NCBI GenBank assembly: GCA_951804945.1
Contig: OX638163.1
Coordinates: 4,092,001-4,156,000 of the forward strand
Reading direction: 5' to 3'
Length of the DNA stretch: 64,000 bases
Source: Podarcis cretensis
Lineage: Eukaryota
The notes beneath the pieces were generated by a model. It saw only the letters and a program-made list of their open reading frames with translations, was not told the DNA's origin and made no database searches. The translations under genes were made by a program, and so were the position numbers. Numbering within the stretch: position 1 is the first letter of the stretch; the number at the start of each line of letters is the position of its first letter. This document shows, piece after piece, positions 6,379 through 63,562 of this stretch.

Positions 6379-6511
6379 NNNNNNNNNNNNNNNNNNNNNN
6401 NNNNNNNNNNNNNNNNNNNNNNNNNNNNNNNNNNNNNNNNNNNNNNNNNNNNNNNNNNNNNNNNNNNNNNNNNNNNNNNNNNNNNNNNNNNNNNNNNNNN
6501 NNNNNNNNNNN
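6379..6511. other. Assembly gap (133 N)
   Basis: Run of N. Confidence 1.
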
Positions 6512-9500: not shown

Positions 9501-10370
9501 TTGGCTGTGCACATCAGCCTTCGCCACAGCTGGAGATGATGGGATATGTTACCCATAACATCTGGCACCAGGTTGGCAAAGGCTGGTGGGTATGATGATT
9601 TCCTTATGATGAAGGAGAGCCTCACAGGATTTTATCCAACTAAGTCATAGTCAAAGTAGACCAACCTGAAATTAATGAATCTGTCAGCTGTGACCATTCA
9701 GTTCAGTGTGTCTACTCTGAGTAGAACTAACACTGGATGCAACCCATGCCTGCAGAGAGGCCCTTCTTCATGAATGGCTTTCTATAGGTTTTTTATAGAC
9801 ATAGTCCTCCTCATCAGCAGGATTATTTTATTTGCTTGTGGTAAGTGTGGCCCCCAGGCCTCTCTGCCTGGCCCTCAGGAGCCTTCCCTAGGCCACACAC
9901 TTCCCTGAGCCAGACCTCTTACTAGTCCTGCTTTGCATCCTCATTGAGTGCTTTTGTATAGCTGGAATGTGTCTTTGAACTCTGATCATGAGTCTTGAGT
10001 GCCTGGACAGAGGGCAGAGAGATGTGTGTGAGTGTGGGTGTAGAAACTAGTCTAATGTACAAAGGTAAAATTGACATCCATTGCTCTATGCAGGCTGAAT
10101 CTAGACACATCAAATAAGTGTTTCAGTGAAACACGTTGTAAATTTAAACAGGGAAATCCTGTAGGGAAAGACAGGACTCCACAGCACCGTCTGGTGGCGC
10201 ATTGTTATATTGCATATACAACACATATAAATCACCTTTTCTTTACCAATCTAGCTGAGTCCCCAGCTTTGCCATAAGCCAGTGGGACGCCCCAAGCCCC
10301 ACCAGACTGTTTACTGTGCATTTCTGAGCGCTGAGTGGGAAGAAAGACTGAATTCCTGAACCTTTTTTCT

Positions 10371-16889: not shown

Positions 16890-19800
16890 GTGATCTGAAT
16901 ATTCCCTTATTGCACTGTTATTTCTTTCTGCATGCAAGACCCTGTTTTCTTCACACTGTGTGATATATACTTCATTACTTGCAACTCCCTTAATTTGCCA
17001 GTCTTTCTGATCTGTATATCTAAGTTTAGAACATACTGGAAAAACAAAGATTTAACGCCCTCAAGATTGGTCCCATCTTGTTTTGTGAAAGGTTCCCAGA
17101 ATTAAACGGGATGGATCTGTAACAATGTCTTATAATTTAATATGATCTAGGGCTGTTTGGTCATTTTTGGTGGCAAAAATCAGTTCAGTTGTCTGGGGAA
17201 GAAATATGGGGTTGTGTACAACATTAGCACTACTTAGTGTATACTCAGAGTAGACCACTGAAATTAATTAATATGATTAATTAGGCCAATTGGTTTTAGT
17301 GGGTTTATTCTGCTTATAACTCAGGTAGATACAGCCTTTGGTGTTTTTATGCACAGCTAGATATTTGGTGATCAACCAATTTGTTCTCCATCAAGAGACT
17401 TTAGGTTTATGCATTTTGCTATAATTTTTCTCTGCAATTCGAATTTCACAGTGAAATGTACATTGAAGAAGATCCAATGTTAGCCACACCCAGAACCATT
17501 GAAATTTAAGTCTGTTGATTTCAATGGATCAACTGTTAAGAATGACTTAGTAGGATCCCACCCATTATTTTTATGTTGTGGTCCATCTTGTAGAATATAT
17601 ATTTATTTTTCGAAACCTTTTTTTTGTTGGAGAGCATATTTTCTTTCTTTGTTCATGTGTATATATATATATATTGCTTTTCATCAAGTAGAAGTTCGTA
17701 AAGCAGTTTCCAAAAACCCAGCAACTAAAACTGAACGAAAACTAGATAATCAATAATTTATTTTATTTTAAATAAATGAATGAATAAATAATAACTTGTG
17801 AATGTTTGAAGTAAGAAAGAATATAATGCAGTAAAATATCCAGTAACGTCAAAATGCTGTAAAACCTATGGGATTGGAAAGCATTAAAATTTAAATAACC
17901 CATATATCAGAGCAGCTAATCAGATAGACAAGCTCCTCTGTCTGGCCCTTTGAGTGCTCACTAGGCCACACTGCTCACCCAGCCTTGATCAACTGCAGAA
18001 GCCCTTGACTGCTTCTGCTTGACTGGAATGTACTCTTGAACTGCGATTGTGCTTCTTGCTTGCCTCTTTATGGCTTTTGAAACCTCTGTGTTTCTGCATG
18101 ACTGGAATGTAGCCAACTGTACAAACGTTGCTCTGTGTATTTTTTTTTTTGCCACCTCTGGCATGCAGCCCTCAGAAGGTTGCTCATGAGGGAATCTGGC
18201 CCTTGGGTTGCAAAAGGGTCCCACACCCACCCCTGAAAGAAGCCCCCATGCCGCTGGGTTTTTCTGCTAGAGGGATCTGAATCATTCAGAACAGAGCTCC
18301 AACTTTACTCTGCTCCAGGTTGGGGGGGGGGGCGAGTATCCCATGTGCAAGAGAGGGTCTGAAGCGCAGGATGCTGGCTCAGCAGCAGCAACAGCATGGC
18401 ACTCAAAATGTCCTCTGTACTGCCAGGAGCCAGCAACCTTTTCCGAATTATTAACTCAAATCAGATGAGATCAGCATCCCCGGACCTAACTTGTTCCATC
18501 TGCTGCTTCTTGCTGACTTGCAGAGTTCTGGGAGAAGGACTTACAGGTTTTGAGGGCATCCCACATCCTGCTTGGCAAAAGCTGATGTCTCTCTCCTTCC
18601 ACCAGAGTGTTGTAGAATCGATGCAGCCCTTTGCTCCGGTGTGTCTGCATTGTGGCTCTGCTGGTGGAGGATCTTACACACCTCTCCCAAGTTATTTTAC
18701 TCCAGTTCATTTCCTTGTGCAGGAGATGTTTCCAAAAGACTGAACCCCATGGTTTGCAGCAGTGACCAGTCCAGATTTTTCTCTAGGGGCAGTCAGTCAC
18801 TTGACGTACACATTTGTGTATGAAGTAGGGTAGACATATTGAAATTAATGTACCTAAGTGCATCATGTCCATGAATTTCAAGGGGTCTACTCCAAGTAGG
18901 AGTAAGATTGGGTTGTATCCCAATCAGAGTAGACCCACTGATTATTATTTTTTTAATGACTAACTTTAATTCCATTCATTTCAGTGGGTCTACTCTTGAG
19001 TGTAACTTAGTTGGATACAACCCATAGTTTTAAGCGTTTGTAGAACTACTCATTTTTTGTAATAAATTAGTCTGCTTCCATCCCAGTAGCGTAGCTAGAC
19101 AGGGACGGGGTGGGGGCATTTTTCTTTGTTATTGTGGTATGTATTTTGTGTTTTTATATTGTAAACTGCCTTGAAGAGTAGGGTAGAAATTTAATAAACA
19201 ATAACAATAATATAAAGTCTGCACAGGAATGGAAGAGGATGGACTCAGTAGTCCCATCCTCAAGTAGTACTAGGAAGAATTGGACCCTCATGGGTCCCTC
19301 CCTCCCTCCCTCCCTCCCTCCCCTTCTTCAAAACAGGTGACAAGCAACATCTTCCACACCACCTGGAGGTGGCACACCCAGCCCAGTCCTCCAGTGCCTT
19401 GTCTCTGCTTCCAATTGCAGCATCTGTTGCCTGAGGCAATTGCCTCACTTTGACTCATAGTAGGGCTGGCCCTAAGGCTACCATTGGATGCTGTGCTTAT
19501 CCAGTTGTCCCCATGAATGTGTGAACGTATCCTTTTAGCAGGCTTAGCTTTGGGAGGCCAGAGTTAACAGGTGAGAACTTTCACTGTGTGTTTTTGTTTA
19601 ATAGGGCTTCATTGGCTATTTTACAAGGGTATTAAATTGTAGGCCATCTCACATGCCAGGGTTAGGATGGCCTAGAAATTCTAATAAAAATAAGAAGTTG
19701 TCAGCAGTGCAGCTATTTCCTTCAGTTGTTTATATTTTTGAGAGTAAATAATTTGCCGTGCATTGCCTAATTCTTTCCAAATGCCTGACAAAAAAGAAGA

Positions 19801-32009: not shown

Positions 32010-32215
32010 GGGACGCAGGTGGCGCTGTGGGTTAAAGCCTCAGCGCCTAGGGCTTGCCGATCGAAAGGTTGGCGGTTCGAATCCCTGCGGCGGGGTGCGC
32101 TCCCGCTGCTCGGTCCCAGCGCCTGCCAACCTAGCAGTTCGAAAGCACCTCCAGGTGCAAGTAGATAAATAGGGACCGCTTACCAGCGGGAAGGTAAACG
32201 GCGTTTCCGTGTGCG

Positions 32216-32252
<37 letters not shown>

Positions 32253-32390
32253 CCAGAGCAGCGATGTCACACTGGCCACGTGACCCGGAAGTGTCTCCGG
32301 ACAGCGCTGGCCCCTGGCCTCTTAAGTGAGATGGGCGCACAACCCCAGAGTCTGTCAAGACTGGCCCGTACGGGCAGGGGTACCTTTACC
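32010..32390 (+). mobile_element. Sauria SINE, full length, CpG-rich variant with internal (GGCTCT)6
   Basis: GGGACGCAGGTGGCGCTGTGG head, GGTTCGAATCC B box, tacctttacc tail; 13-bp TSD TTATACAACAGTG at 31995-32007 and 32391-32403. Confidence 0.92.
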
Positions 32391-32858
32391 TTATACAACA
32401 GTGAGCATTCATCCTGCTTTCACACTGATTTTCTTGTGGGCTGTTTATATGCATTTCCATTAACCATTCATTCATCCTGCACTTTTCAATTAATTTTCCC
32501 ATTGCTTTCCAAACTGCAAAGTCCACTTCGGTTTTTTAAAAGGGAGACAGAGCCCTTTAGTCCACCATAAATGGCAGGTGCGCTATTGGTGGGCTGGAAG
32601 CCTCTTCTGTTCATTCTGCTTTTCCTCACAGGACTTTCTTTCCTGCTGACCATCTTCCTAGCCTTCCTTTGACCTCATTACACTTTGATTAATGCAGCTT
32701 AAATTTGCATTTGTCTTTCTTGTTTAATTTGCAGCCAAACCACCTTGATGACTCATGGCAATCCTGAGATCCTTTTCTGATGTACTGCTTCCCTCTTCCA
32801 GGAAAATACTTTGCAGTAGTTGCACCAGGTGGTGCTTGCATCTTTTAAAAATAATAAA

Positions 32859-38317: not shown

Positions 38318-41021
38318 GTAAATGTCTTGCAGAGCATTTTTGCTCATTTCTCCTTGACCCCATGGCATGATAATGATTTGTTTGTTCACAGTAGCTTTGA
38401 TGGCTGTGGCTGTCCAGGAAAGCCACCTTTCTGGATCTGAAAATGTCTTATCAGAGCAGCAGTTCGATGAAGTGTACAAGATACAGTTGTAAAAATGTAC
38501 ATGTTCCTGAACAGGAAATTGTTATATGTAGATTTAAAGACTCCAAAACTCACGATGCAATGTGACCATGTGTGGAGCATGTATGCCCAAAGATACCTAT
38601 CACTTTTAATAATAACAAAAATGAAAATATTGAAGGAACAACAGCACAAAAGGTACCAGATGAAGTCTGAATTGGGCTCAGAAAATGGAATTCCTTTTGC
38701 TGGTTCTGTGCATCACTAGTTATAACTGCAGAAGCTGTGTGTTTAGCCTAACAGAGTTTAAACATTAGGATTGTTCTCTATGGGTCTTTGCTGAGTGAAA
38801 ACTTCAGCTAGTGCCAAAGACAATGGCTGCATTTGGACATCATGCTAAACCATAGCTGAGCATAACGAGAATGAGCTGCAGCACCCCCTACCTTTTACTT
38901 ATTCTTCTTATTTCAGTTAATCACAGTTTAGTATGTCATCTGAATCCTAAACATGGCTAATACTAATTGCAGTTTGTCTAGACGAGCCATTGTCAGAAAC
39001 TGCTGGCAACAGCCCCATGTAGTGATGTACATAACTGCATCCTTGCAGCCAGCAGCTGCCTCATGTGGTAATTCTCTGAACTGAAGGTGGCTGCTTCTCA
39101 GCAAAGAACCTTCCAGATCTGGACTGTCTCCACCCAGTCAGGGTGGCCACTAAATCCTTCTGGGCAGGAAGGAGAAGAAAGGGTTTCCTGCTGCAGCTGA
39201 AACTTGCTCGAGTAACAAAATATGCCTGACCTCTGGTGTGTCTTGCATTTCTGGTGTTGATTTTGTTCCTGCCTTTCCCTCTAGCCCTACCTTCTAGGAT
39301 GGCTTCTGATCTTGACTTATAGAGCCTTGAGTCATCTTTCACCCTCAGATCCTTGCTGTTCATTCATCCTGACTCTGGCTTGTATTCAAGTCCTACCTTC
39401 CAGCAGTGGGAAGCGCAGGCCCAGGGACTAAATATGGCCCCTCAATCCTCTTTTGCCGGCCCTTGGAACATTCCCCAGGCCACACAGCCCAGTACTGACC
39501 CTGTTTCACACCCCAAGTGTTTCTGCCTGGCTAGAATGTGCCCTTGAACTCAGGTGATGCCTTTTCTTGTCTGAACGGAAGACAGGGAGCAGTGTGTGTA
39601 CAAACTACCCAATTGTACAAGCCGCTGTACACTGATGATGATGATGATTTGTTTATATGCCACCCCTCTGACTGGGTTCCTGCAGCCATTCTGGGCATCT
39701 TCCAAAGATAAAGTTTGCATTTATTGCTCCTCCCACTTTTGCCTCTGGCTATAGCCACCACTAGCATTGGGTCCTCAGAAGGTTGCCCTGGAGAGAACTT
39801 CATATTTTTACAAATTCCTTTAAGGCTTCCAATCTTGAACTTGGCAGCCTGCAATAACCCCCCACCCCCACCCCACCCTGTACAGTATTTTGTCCTCAAA
39901 ATGCATGGTGGGAAACGCCACCAAGAGACGAGTAAATTAAAGCTAACCATTGCGGTTTCCTTCTGTCACTGGGAATGAAAGAGGGAAATTGGATTATTTC
40001 CCAGACGGATTCGGATCAAATCGGTGTGCAGCTGTCTAGCAGGGAATGTAAACATTGATTGATGCCAGCCTGCCCAGATGAAACCGTGTGCCCACGTGGA
40101 AATGATCCCTGTTTTAAAATCCGTTGTCAGGATCTTTGCTAGATTGTGATGCCAGGCACTTACTCAAGAGAGAAAAGTCTGGTTCCCCGTGGGCCTGAGG
40201 GGGAACCACAGACATAAAAGCTGTAAAGCCCACATTTGTGTGCATGTTCGAAACCACCAAACTGACCAACTGCTGTTTAGCCTCACAGCCTCTGACATAG
40301 TCATCTCATTCCCATGTGACCACAAGGAGTAGCCTGTGGTGCCTTTGGTGAGACCAGCTGTGGGCTACTCAACTGCTGTGGCCTGTCCTAGAGGCCATAT
40401 TTTACAGTCATTCTTTGCTCAGTGGTGGAGCCCTGTTTCAACTGTTTTGCAGTTTTTCATTTTTTTTTTATAGCCCACCTCTTTCTCTCCCCCCTCTTGT
40501 TCTTCTTTGTTGCTTTTCTGGAGGGCCTTTTCAGTTGTGGCTCCCTGCTGATGGGATGCTCTCCCCAGCGAGGCGCCTCACTTGGGTCTCAATGCTCTGC
40601 AGATGGAGTTACATGGCAAACAATAATAGTTAAGTGCCGCCTTCTTGAACCTTTGGTGAAAGGTATGGTGGAAGATGGAACACTGTTTGTGGCTGTTATT
40701 CTCTTTCCACTTCTTGCCCCTCTCCCCACAAGACCCTTCCAGACATGCTCTTGAGTAAGAAATGTAGGTCCCTTTCGTACTTAAGAAAACACAGCTGGCC
40801 TCTACTGATTGCCACTGGCCTGAGAGTATGAAAGCCAGGCTGTATTATTTTTACTCAATTAGTTTTCTGTCTAGAAATATCACTGTGGAAAATTTCCATT
40901 TCCTTACCAATTATGTCATTAGAAAAAGAATGTTGCGCTTGTTCAGTCAAAATGCCTCCCCCCTTTCCCTCTCTTTTCCACCTCCCCCTCCTGCCCCAAA
41001 CTCCATTGTAGCCTTTGTGGC

Positions 41022-61300: not shown

Positions 61301-61591
61301 GCTTAAAAGCTCCTTTCTCACCAAGTTTTTCCAGCACAGGAAGAGCTTTGAATCTCTCCCCTTTGCTTACTGGGCTCAGGGATGCTCTTGCATTTAACCA
61401 CCACAACAATCCTCTTAGGAGATAGGTAAGGCTGAGAGGCAGTGACTGGTCCAAGGTGAAAGCTTCATGGCCAAGTGTGGATTTGAACCCCGGTCTCCCA
61501 GGACCTAGTTCAATACTCTAACCACTGCACCTAACTGATGCTAGTGAAATTCAGTTAAAATGCCTATTGCCTGCTTGGAAACTAAAATAGT

Positions 61592-62313
61592 TCTTGGTGT
61601 CCATCTGGCTTGAGAGACAATGGAGTGTTCCTCCAAGGGTGAAGTCAAACGGCTGTGTTAGCACCACCAAAGGGACCTCCCTGGGGCGCAAGCCTGAGCA
61701 GTGGGTATGGAGGTCCTGAGCTCAACTCTTGGAATTGCTGATGTGGTCCAAATGAAAGCAGAGCAATACATCTGGCGCCACCTTGGCTGCAGGAGTTGCC
61801 AGAGGGAGGCATACAAAGCACCTTTCAATCGTCTTAGGAACCCCTCTGCAGATTTGTATAGGGTTTACTCCTTAGCCTTTTGTTCCCCCAAAAAACATTC
61901 CACAAAGCAGTGGAGGTTTAGGATCAGAGTTTTCTTTCTCCTGGATGGACTACCTTCCCAGGCTGATGAGCCCCATCTGCCCCTCATTTCCCTCTACAGC
62001 ACATGCAGAAACTGCCTTCTTGACTGCTAGACCACCTCTTGGTCTCATCCGCTCAATCCGCTGCCGCCTGTCTTTGCATGCAGGGGAAGTCTGTAACTCA
62101 CCTGGGGTTGGAGAGCCATCTGCTTCCCTCACCTTGTTTAGCTGGCCAGTTGAAGCCATTCCTGGGGTGTGGCCGCTGCCACATGCTAACAGGACAGCTT
62201 CTAGGAGCCACAGGTGAGCACTGAGTGCAGAGCAAGGACCAAAGGAGGGCAAACTACCTTAGAAGGAGCATGACTGACCCCCACCAGAGATACTACCCCT
62301 CCCCCAACACTCC
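61592..62313 (-). mobile_element. Non-autonomous, probably RTE-related retroelement with an HDV-like ribozyme fold at its 5' end
   Basis: Degenerate 13-bp TSD aaactaaaatagt (61579-61591) / aaagggaaatagt (62314-62326); no credible ORF; RTE-like 3' end cactccattgtctctcaagccagatggacaccaaga (family from recall). Confidence 0.65.
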
Positions 62314-63562
62314 AAAGGGAAATAGTAAATAAGTAAGTAATCTATTGAAAGGGGCAGGAAGAAGGACTTGGGACTATCATGCGTATGATGATATGCCTTT
62401 CGTGCTTTATCAGTGGCATAGTAATGCCAAATGAGACGCAGAATTGTTGGGACTTCCCAGCCCTTCCTTACCCTGTGTGATAGATTGCTGGATTCCCCTG
62501 ATGTGTGATTCATCAGAGTACCAGTTATCTTAAAGGGATGGGGGTAAGTAGCTTCAGATTTTGTGTGACAGGAGATAGCTGCTGCCCTACCATCTGGAGC
62601 CAAGTCATCAGTCCCACCTGCCAGTTAAAACAAACAAATAAGTAAATAAAGTGCAGGATCTCTGCATTTACAACTGCCTCCTGTCCACCAAGCTTTCAGC
62701 TGTTTGGGCTCCTGCTGCGATCTTGCCATCACAGATTGGCCAGGAGTTCCTGCTTTGCTTTAAAAAAATATAAATAAAACAAAAAAGGACATTGACAGGG
62801 TTTTGCTTGCTGTAGCAGTTTGGCTGTCTTCCCCGCTGCACATCTTATGCAGTTACACTACCGCTCTGTGTGACTCTTCCTCTCTCTCATACTGTACTCG
62901 CTTTGGTCAGTGTTGGCTCTCAGTTTTGTTGGCTCCAAGTCTGCATCATGATTATCGCGTTTGGCTCCACTTTTCTTTCCTCTTTCCCCTCTCCCATTTC
63001 CTTGCTGGCCCACCTCTCCTCTCCTCTCCTTCTTTCCTCCCGGCTGATTTGCATGTTACAGTCAGCTGCTGATCTGTCTGCTTAAGAGCTTGCATGAGTG
63101 GGCAGCTTGCATGAGCTGTACTGTGTGTGGGAGGAAAATGAAGCTGGACTAGGGATTTCCATTTCCAAGTGCTCCCAACCCCACTATTCACAGAAGTCTA
63201 GTGTTGCACAATCACGCCTGTCTTGCATGTGGTGTGTAGTGGTTCAGAGTGTTGTACTAGGACCAGGGAATTTCAGATTCAAATCCCTGCAAGGCCAAGA
63301 ACCTTACTAGGTAGTATGGGGCCAGTCTCAAACTCTCAGCCTAGCCTACCTCATAGGGTTGTTCTGAGAAGAAAATGGTGAAAGAAGAACTACTTAAAGG
63401 AGTAGTAAGATAAAAATTATGGGGTTGTACCCAACTAAATTCTGTTCAGACTCATTAAAGTTAATGTACCTGTTAGTAATATACATCAGTTTCAATGGGT
63501 ATACTCTTGAGTAGGACTAACATTGGATACCACCCATAAATAATATTGGCCATTATAATATA

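What the first reader, a model, noticed from the sequence alone, without database searches (positions are those of the whole stretch)
62128..62313. HDV-like ribozyme fold with an extra hairpin in L3, starting exactly at the 5' end of a non-coding retroelement
Seen: the minus strand reads GGAGUGU (P1 5', 62313-62307), an 88-nt J1/2, CUCACCUGU (P2), GGC (P3), UCC UAGAA [GCUGUC CUGUUAGCAUGU GGCAGC] G (L3), GCC (P3'), ACACCCC (P1'), A GG (P1.1 partner of the L3 CC), AA UGGC UUCAACUG GCCA (P4), GCUAA (J4/2), AC A AGGUGAG (P2'). The first G of P1 directly abuts a 13-bp degenerate TSD (10/13 match). Established: this is the element order of the HDV/CPEB3 nested double pseudoknot, GCUAA matches the antigenomic HDV J4/2 with its catalytic C, and such ribozymes generate the 5' ends of R2, RTE and ingi/L1Tc retrotransposons. 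Inference: canonical L3 is about 7-8 nt, whereas here it is 33 nt with its own 6-bp helix, so standard descriptors would miss it. It may be an undescribed structural variant that defines a 722-nt SINE-like family in which I see no tRNA-derived head. This copy is damaged (A-C in P1, A before GG) and antisense to the collagen gene.
Basis: partly seen in the sequence, partly recalled or inferred. Interest (0 to 1): 0.85.

Follow-up and report, generated by a model that had tools for sequence, protein, structure and literature searches.

The report
Doubtful HDV-like ribozyme drawing in repeat
The drawing needs several exceptions to the known rules, is about as good as chance gives, and is absent from the only related sequences I could find, so it is more likely coincidence than a new ribozyme variant.

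Summary

The evidence is split, and I lean towards no ribozyme.

**Against a ribozyme:**
- No Rfam HDV-family model matches, even at E<=10 on 241 nt.
- A neutral composite score is reached in 10 of 80 shuffled windows. This falls to 1 of 240 only if the L3 hairpin is rewarded after the fact.
- The 3' domain prefers another nested fold, -38.1 against -21.8 kcal/mol.
- The 10/13 TSD alone is worthless: 45% of window positions have one.
- The only detectable relatives are eight copies of an old ~400-nt repeat. They share an 88-nt block and lack P3', P4, J4/2 and P2'.

**For a ribozyme:**
- The TSD starts T|A and follows a CAA-like tail, as published for Bov-B. Only 0.06% of positions do so.
- One relative keeps a P2 closure and a J4/2-like motif.

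Other genomic copies could not be fetched, so covariation was not tested.

Odds: coincidence about 0.5, genuine relic about 0.3. The scan holds unchecked notes of similar folds elsewhere in this genome.

The parts
62307..62313 (-). Proposed P1 5' strand (GGAGUGU). The first G would be the cleavage product's 5' end.
   Evidence: It pairs 6/7 with 62170-62164 (A-C at the third pair), and the closing pair is G-C rather than G-U. It also has a perfect 9-nt complement at 61629-61621 (I15).
62219..62306 (-). Proposed J1/2, 88 nt.
   Evidence: Folds into an irregular hairpin of -28.6 kcal/mol that is no more stable than shuffles (z -0.02). 22 nt stay unpaired before P2.
62210..62218 (-). Proposed P2 5' strand.
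   Evidence: P2 is the only proposed helix also present in the MFE ensemble (pair probabilities 0.6-1.0).
62207..62209 (-). Proposed P3 5' strand (GGC).
   Evidence: Pair probability 0 in the nested ensemble.
62174..62206 (-). Proposed L3, 33 nt. It starts UCC and holds a 6-bp hairpin (62198-62193 with 62180-62175).
   Evidence: Canonical L3 is 7-8 nt (my recollection of the genomic and antigenomic HDV ribozymes, not checked here). No search with L3 of 6-9 nt finds a fold in the window ('canon').
62164..62173 (-). Proposed P3' (GCC) and P1' (ACACCCC).
   Evidence: 62183-62168 is a perfect palindrome (6-bp stem, 4-nt loop) that competes with P3 and P1 and is part of the MFE.
62161..62163 (-). 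Spacer A, then GG (proposed P1.1 partner of the L3 CC).
   Evidence: In known HDV ribozymes P1.1 follows P1' directly (coaxial P1-P1.1-P4 stack, PMC13635239).
62143..62158 (-). Proposed P4, a 4-bp stem with an 8-nt loop.
   Evidence: Pair probability 0 in the nested ensemble.
62128..62142 (-). Proposed J4/2 (GCUAA) and P2' strand.
62314..62326 (-). Upstream copy of the 13-nt direct repeat (putative TSD). It starts with A, preceded by T.
61579..61591 (-). Downstream copy of the direct repeat, preceded by CAAGAA when its first A is counted.
   Evidence: The Bov-B signature is taken from PMC13295347.
61592..62313 (-). It has no coding remnant and no second copy in the window.
62178..62265 (-). 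88-nt block distantly similar to the core of an old interspersed repeat (family F below). It covers the end of J1/2, P2 5', P3 5' and two thirds of L3.

Best explanation
Most likely there is no ribozyme here. The HDV-like picture is a coincidental drawing on a GC-rich, hairpin-prone stretch of decayed interspersed-repeat DNA in a collagen intron.

The drawing holds only if four exceptions are allowed together: a 33-nt L3, one P1 mismatch with a G-C closing pair, a spacer base before P1.1, and an 88-nt J1/2. With that freedom, chance supplies matches of similar total quality.

The RNA by itself would rather form one long irregular hairpin closed by the same P2 helix.

The insertion may still be a real Bov-B-mobilised retro-copy with its 5' junction at 62313.

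Shown: the helices exist, the fold is not favoured, the statistics are near chance, and the relatives lack the fold. Inferred: that the family to which this copy belongs has no such fold.
For: - No HDV-family covariance model matches at E<=10, in 4 kb or in 241 nt.
- No canonical-L3 fold exists in the window.
- The loose descriptor gives 10 sites against 9.5 per shuffle.
- The candidate's composite score of 19.5 is reached in 10 of 80 shuffled windows.
- The 3' domain MFE is -38.1 kcal/mol against -21.8 for the nested part of the HDV drawing. P3, P4 and the L3 hairpin have zero ensemble probability. The whole 194 nt has z -0.43.
- The palindrome at 62183-62168 sequesters P3' and half of P1'.
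- A 10/13 TSD occurs for 45% of positions.
- The only significant relative is S (37203-37005, minus strand; nhmmer E 0.009, 0 of 100 shuffles). S belongs to a repeat family with 8 copies in the window.
- In the alignment these copies have gaps at P3', the first 3 nt of P1', the 3' arm of P4, J4/2 and P2'.
- Family homology extends about 230 nt upstream of the shared block, so in them the block is internal and not a 5' end.
- None of these copies passes even the loose descriptor.
Against: - A descriptor requiring every feature to be at least as good as in the candidate finds only the candidate. Zero hits came in 100 shuffles at an intermediate stringency with 0.09 expected, and my extrapolation is about 1e-4 per window.
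- If an L3 hairpin is rewarded, only 1 of 240 shuffles reaches the score.
- The fold starts exactly where a TSD with the published Bov-B signature ends, and 0.05-0.06% of positions have that signature.
- HDV-like ribozymes are known at the 5' ends of RTE-clade elements (PMC3774820), and long structured J1/2 domains are known in active ones (PMC4908430).
- Relative S keeps a J4/2-like motif followed by a P2' strand (49 of 5000 shuffles), with two double-sided compensated pairs in P2.
- The link between this copy and family F is weak. A profile of the 8 copies does not find it at E<=100, so the absence of the fold in F may say little about this copy's own family.
Confidence: 0.5

Rival explanations
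1. A genuine but decayed HDV-like self-cleaving ribozyme forms the first 186 nt of a Bov-B (RTE)-mobilised, ORF-less retroelement. In the active parent it would have cut read-through transcripts just 5' of the first G, defining the element's RNA 5' end. The enlarged L3 with its own hairpin would be a tolerated expansion between P1.1 and P3.
For: - The order and spacing of all core parts are right, with UCC at the start of L3, GGC/GCC for P3 and GCUAA for J4/2.
- The candidate is unique under an 'at least as good' descriptor and is matched in 1 of 240 shuffles when the L3 hairpin counts.
- The boundary carries the Bov-B signature, p about 6e-4 before allowing for choices I made after reading PMC13295347.
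- There is literature precedent for RTE 5' ribozymes and large J1/2 domains (PMC3774820, PMC4908430).
- S keeps a P2/J4/2-like closure.
- Unchecked scan notes describe 176-181-nt HDV-like folds, one with an enlarged L3, at 5' ends of ORF-less RTE-derived elements elsewhere in this genome. These are leads only.
Against: - All the points listed in favour of the best explanation apply.
- I found no precedent for a hairpin inside L3 in the papers I could search.
- The closing pair is G-C rather than the usual G-U (my recollection that G-U is usual, not checked here).
- The 3' end shows no significant similarity to the Bov-B 3' end present in the same window.
- The J1/2 hairpin is no more stable than shuffles.
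Confidence: 0.32
2. A conserved structured RNA domain that is not a ribozyme: a long irregular hairpin closed by the P2 helix, for example a recognition or stability element of the parent repeat.
For: - The 91-nt domain 62218-62128 folds to -38.1 kcal/mol, z -2.58, with 3 of 200 shuffles as stable.
- P2 is the one helix kept in both models and the one with compensated changes in S.
Against: - z -2.58 is modest.
- The S counterpart folds worse than its shuffles (z +1.41) and does not form P2 in its MFE.
- The other family copies have no P2' strand.
Confidence: 0.1

Closest known systems
HDV-like self-cleaving ribozymes at the 5' ends of non-LTR retrotransposons (R2, R4/Dong, L1Tc/ingi, RTE; e.g. 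drz-Agam-2 of Anopheles)
   Same: The order of strands matches the nested double pseudoknot. P3 is 3 bp, L3 begins UCC, a C-U-A-A stretch lies in J4/2, and the J1/2 insert is long. The position is at a putative element 5' junction.
   Different: L3 is 33 nt with its own hairpin, against 7-8 nt. There is one mismatch in P1, a G-C closing pair, and a spacer base between P1' and P1.1. No Rfam model matches, no covariation is available, and activity is untested.
Antigenomic HDV ribozyme
   Same: GCUAA in J4/2 and UCC at the start of L3 (from my own knowledge of the sequence, not from a tool).
   Different: Everything else in the sequence differs. HDV has a 7-nt L3, and its P1.1 follows P1 directly.
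Bov-B (RTE-clade) LINE and Sauria SINE insertions of squamates
   Same: The TSD begins with A after a T, in a T-rich target. The 3' end is a CAA-like hexamer, matching the (CAA)n plus T|A pattern of PMC13295347.
   Different: There is only one degenerate CAA unit. The 3' end shows no significant similarity to the Bov-B 3' end at 45850-45740 or to the Sauria SINE profile. No other copies were seen.
Old ~400-nt interspersed repeat of this window (family F, unnamed)
   Same: An 88-nt block (62265-62178) aligns with the family core. The best match is copy S (z 6.6). The other copies align weakly but in the same register.
   Different: The family profile does not detect this copy. The flanks are not similar. 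The family lacks the 3' half of the proposed fold.

Membership tests
HDV-like ribozyme | Strand order P1-J1/2-P2-P3-L3-P3'-P1'-P1.1-P4-J4/2-P2' (nested double pseudoknot) | tested here: met
   All parts are contiguous at 62313-62128.
HDV-like ribozyme | Uninterrupted P1 of about 7 bp starting at G+1, usually with a G-U closing pair | tested here: not met
   6 of 7 pairs, with A-C at the third pair and a G-C closing pair.
HDV-like ribozyme | Short L3 (about 7-8 nt) carrying the two P1.1 bases and the U/G reverse-wobble pair | tested here: not met
   L3 is 33 nt. No fold with L3 of 6-9 nt exists in the window. A U at L3 position 1 and a G before P3' exist but cannot be assigned.
HDV-like ribozyme | Two-pair P1.1 directly after P1', stacking between P1 and P4 | tested here: not met
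   CC and GG are present, but one A separates P1' from GG.
HDV-like ribozyme | Catalytic C in J4/2, followed by adenines | tested here: met
   GCUAA at 62142-62138.
HDV-like ribozyme | Match to a curated covariance model (Rfam HDV, CPEB3 and drz families) | tested here: not met
   No such hit at E<=10. An L3 insertion would be penalised, so this is weak evidence.
HDV-like ribozyme | Covariation supporting the helices across relatives | tested here: inconclusive
   Only one doubtful relative is usable. In it, 7 of 9 changed pairs stay paired and 29 of 500 shuffles reach the observed value. The eight family copies have gaps at P3', P4 3', J4/2 and P2'.
HDV-like ribozyme | Self-cleavage leaving a 5'-OH at G+1 | not testable with these tools
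Bov-B/RTE-mobilised non-autonomous retroelement | TSD whose first base is A after T, in a T-rich target | tested here: met
   62327 is T and 62326 is A. The 10/13 repeat plus this signature holds for 0.05-0.06% of positions.
Bov-B/RTE-mobilised non-autonomous retroelement | 3' microsatellite such as (CAA)n | tested here: inconclusive
   A single CAAGAA (5/6 to CAACAA), sharing its last A with the TSD.
Bov-B/RTE-mobilised non-autonomous retroelement | 3' end related to the partner LINE's 3' end | tested here: not met
   Local alignment to the Bov-B 3' end at 45850-45740 scores 11.5 against a null of 11.1. The Sauria SINE profile gives no hit.
Bov-B/RTE-mobilised non-autonomous retroelement | Many copies with a common 5' end | not testable with these tools
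   No second copy exists in the window. No access to the rest of the genome.

The most novel reading that the evidence does not exclude
Squamate genomes carry an ORF-less, Bov-B-mobilised retroelement family whose RNA 5' end is made by an HDV-type ribozyme with a hairpin-bearing, roughly 30-nt L3. This structural variant is unknown to current descriptors and covariance models. This locus would be a decayed copy of it.
Probability: 0.3. Interest if true: 0.65.

Novelty: not a real feature. Interest (0 to 1): 0.3.

Why it matters
If the fold were real, HDV-type ribozymes would be shown to tolerate a helix inserted into the loop that builds the active site. Motif searches that fix L3 at 7-9 nt would then be missing members. 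It would also add a vertebrate RTE-type element to the retrotransposons that process their own 5' ends.

As it stands, the case mainly shows how easily the low-information HDV motif can be drawn once L3 and J1/2 are left free. It also shows that a short degenerate TSD carries no weight by itself.

Tried and rejected
- **Protein route to other copies.** I searched the 100-aa sense ORF over the fold against the protein collection. There were no hits.
- **Metagenome scan.** A scan with a 20-mer from the core found one chance match in a 58% GC contig with no flanking similarity.
- **Scan notes by sequence and by relatives.** Both were blank.
- **Coding remnants.** The six largest ORFs in the element give no Pfam hit at E<=10. 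The ten largest ORFs of the window give none either. There is no RT motif in the six-frame translation. So there was no transposon protein to use as a hook for fetching squamate loci.
- **Collagen exons.** They are 15-18 aa, too short for the protein tools.
- **Similarity to Sauria SINEs.** Gapped local alignments gave z 1.5-2.7, but the SINE profile finds nothing at E<=100 with filters off. Rejected.
- **Similarity of the 3' end to Bov-B.** Not significant.
- **Extension of the match with S.** Neither upstream nor downstream is significant.
- **Single-sequence covariance model of the 3' domain.** The S region ranks third at E 0.38, with nothing else.
- **Alternative boundaries.** An exact 9-mer direct repeat (62320-62312 and 61675-61667) and a perfect 9-nt inverted repeat (62314-62306 and 61629-61621) both touch the 5' junction. 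I estimate each is expected at about 0.03-0.07 by chance. I treat them as coincidences, and as a warning about my own after-the-fact statistics.
- **Ruminski 2011.** The paper is not held in the library.

Full report
**What is there**

- P1 pairs 6 of 7 positions, with an A-C at the third pair and a G-C closing pair.
- J1/2 is 88 nt.
- P2 is 7 bp plus 2 bp across a one-base bulge.
- P3 is GGC/GCC.
- L3 is 33 nt, begins UCC and holds a 6-bp hairpin.
- One A separates P1' from the GG that would pair with the L3 CC.
- P4 is 4 bp with an 8-nt loop.
- J4/2 reads GCUAA.

The 13-nt direct repeat (62326-62314 and 61591-61579) matches at 10 of 13 positions. The observation as written is accurate.

**Is the fold more than chance?**

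No HDV-family model in Rfam matches. This holds at E<=10 both in 4 kb and in the 241 nt around the fold. An insertion in L3 would hurt those models, so this counts only weakly.

- P1 at least 6/7, starting with G.
- J1/2 up to 100 nt.
- L3 of 6-40 nt with CC at positions 2-3.
- 0-1 spacer before GG.
- P2 at least 6 bp.
- P4 at least 4 bp.
- A C shortly before P2'.

The results depend on how the match is judged:

| Test | Result |
|---|---|
| Loose descriptor, real window | 10 sites |
| Loose descriptor, dinucleotide shuffles | 9.5 sites per window |
| L3 limited to 6-9 nt and no exceptions | nothing in the window |
| Every feature at least as good as the candidate | only the candidate |
| Intermediate stringency, 100 shuffles | 0.09 expected per window, 0 at the next step |
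| Trade-off score (pairs, UCC, C[G/U]AA; penalties for long L3 and spacer) | candidate 19.5; 10 of 80 shuffled windows reach it |
| Same score plus a reward for a hairpin inside a long L3 | candidate 25.0; 1 of 240 shuffled windows reach it |

From the "at least as good" test I extrapolate roughly 1e-4 per window. The significance therefore lies anywhere between 0.1 and 0.004 per window or below. It depends on whether the feature that breaks the rule is counted as a merit.

**Thermodynamics**

- The whole 194 nt is no more stable than shuffles (z -0.43).
- The J1/2 hairpin has z -0.02.
- The 91-nt 3' domain prefers a single irregular hairpin at -38.1 kcal/mol (z -2.58). Its base is the same P2 helix. 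Its tip is a perfect palindrome at 62183-62168 that uses P3' and half of P1'.
- The nested part of the HDV drawing scores -21.8 kcal/mol.
- P3, P4 and the L3 hairpin have zero probability in the ensemble.

Pseudoknot and tertiary energies are not modelled, and co-transcriptional folding could favour the L3 hairpin. This weighs against the fold without excluding it.

**The element and its ends**

A 10/13 repeat within 3 kb downstream exists for 45% of all positions in this window. The TSD alone therefore says nothing.

PMC13295347 reports three things for squamate Bov-B insertions:

- They end in (CAA)n.
- Their TSDs start with A after a T.
- They sit in T-rich targets.

Here the upstream repeat starts T|A, and the downstream copy follows CAAGAA when its first A is counted. 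Only 0.05-0.06% of positions in the window satisfy the repeat plus this signature. I chose this test after reading the paper and would have accepted other tails, so the real weight is perhaps ten times less.

This is the best argument that 62313 is a true retro-insertion junction of the RTE type. Against it:

- The 3' end is not significantly similar to the Bov-B 3' end that lies in this same window at 45850-45740.
- It is not similar to the Sauria SINE profile.
- The element has no coding remnant.
- It has no second copy in the window.

**Relatives**

nhmmer with the element alone found one weak relative, S, at 37203-37005 on the minus strand. The evidence for S is E 0.009, 0 of 100 shuffled windows, and a local alignment z near 6. 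The significant block is 62265-62178. It covers the end of J1/2, P2 5', P3 5' and two thirds of L3.

A profile of the two sequences then found further copies:

| Copy | Coordinates | Strand | Note |
|---|---|---|---|
| T | 57058-56885 | - | E 7e-13 in the first profile search |
| U | 5397-5213 | - | |
| V | 6376-6243 | - | cut by the assembly gap |
| X | 39666-39846 | + | |
| Y | 18088-18241 | + | |
| Z | 51611-51420 | - | |
| Q | 10026-10200 | + | |

Together with S these form an old repeat family, which I call F. Its homology runs from about -230 to +160 around the core.

In the multiple alignment, all eight F copies have gaps at P3', the first three bases of P1', the 3' arm of P4, J4/2 and P2'. 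None passes even the loose descriptor. In them the shared block is internal and not at a 5' end.

Taken at face value, the 5' strands of the drawing come from a sequence that works without the 3' strands. That fits coincidence.

Two caveats apply:

- The link between this copy and F is weak. A profile of the eight copies without it does not find it at E<=100. blastn finds nothing. Only S (z 6.6) and Z (z 2.6) stand out, and the rest align weakly though in the same register. The "extra segments" 62177-62168 and 62156-62122 lie outside the block of demonstrable homology.
- S itself has a GCAAAAC motif followed by a strand that pairs with its own P2 5' strand. That arrangement arises in about 1% of shuffles. 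On a sequence-only alignment, P2 shows two double-sided compensated pairs and P1.1 is kept. However, S has no P1, its core folds worse than its shuffles, and the other seven copies have no such closure.

**Literature**

- HDV-like ribozymes at the 5' ends of R2, R4, L1Tc and RTE elements are established (PMC3774820, citing Ruminski 2011, which I could not read).
- A large structured J1/2 domain is known in the fast drz-Agam-2-1 ribozyme (PMC4908430).
- I found no paper linking HDV-like ribozymes with Bov-B or squamates.
- I found no described variant with a helix inside L3. These searches cover open-access text only.
- Structural work stresses the coaxial P1-P1.1-P4 stack and the L3 U/G reverse wobble (PMC13635239). 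A spacer base and a 30-nt insertion would have to accommodate both.

**Scan notes**

The scan holds six unchecked first-reader notes of HDV-like folds in this genome.

- Two are at Bov-B 5' ends.
- Four are on ORF-less RTE-derived elements. Three of these are 176-181 nt, one of them "with an unusually enlarged L3". The fourth note covers a 12.9-kb stretch with three partial copies.

If these are copies of the same family, the extra segments are not private to this copy and the ribozyme reading would gain much. I could not read those sequences, so they are leads and not evidence.

**Verdict**

The drawing is accurate, but its reality as a ribozyme is not shown. My odds are:

- About 0.5 for coincidence on decayed repeat DNA, possibly inside a real Bov-B-type retro-copy.
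- About 0.3 for a genuine relic ribozyme with an enlarged L3.
- About 0.1 for a non-catalytic structured domain.

The decisive data are other copies of the element and read-level 5' ends.

Noticed in passing
window 57058-56885(-), 37202-37027(-), 5397-5213(-), 6376-6243(-), 51611-51420(-), 18088-18241(+), 39666-39846(+), 10026-10200(+): Eight copies of an old, unnamed interspersed repeat. Copies are about 60-85% alike, and homology runs from about -230 to +160 around the core, so roughly 400 nt. I found no tRNA head, ORF or clear termini.
   Followed up: partly
window 45850-45740 (-): A 5'-truncated Bov-B LINE 3' end finishing in (CAA)3.
   Followed up: partly
window 37693-37351(-), 20557-20222(-), 41826-41504(-), 32041-32392(+): Four well-preserved Sauria SINE copies, three ending in ACCTTT repeats (the 41826-41504 tail was not checked). 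The one at 37693-37351 ends 13 nt before the repeat copy S begins.
   Followed up: partly
window 61552-61400 (-), also 48584-48473 and 14165-14042: An older tRNA-derived SINE lies about 45 nt downstream of the putative element on the same strand. Two relatives at about 70% identity lie elsewhere in the window.
   Followed up: no
window 62314-62306 and 61629-61621: A perfect 9-nt inverted repeat. The proposed P1 5' strand has a better complement 676 nt downstream than its proposed partner P1'. No matching TSD for a DNA transposon was seen.
   Followed up: partly
window 62320-62312 and 61675-61667: An exact 9-nt direct repeat (TCCCTTTGG) that overlaps the first two bases of the proposed P1. It is an alternative but unsupported pair of boundaries.
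   Followed up: partly
window 62100-62178 (+): Weak plus-strand resemblance to the Rfam BiP IRES model (17.6 bits against a threshold of 40; E 0.0015 only in the 241-nt search). Probably chance.
   Followed up: no
window 482-52552 (+): Sixteen Gly-X-Y exons of 45 or 54 bp on the plus strand, typical of a fibrillar-type collagen gene with large introns. None was seen after 52552, so the finding lies at least 9.5 kb beyond the last detected exon.
   Followed up: no
window 6379-6511: An assembly gap (133 N) truncates repeat copy V at its 5' side. I did not fill it or look it up.
   Followed up: no
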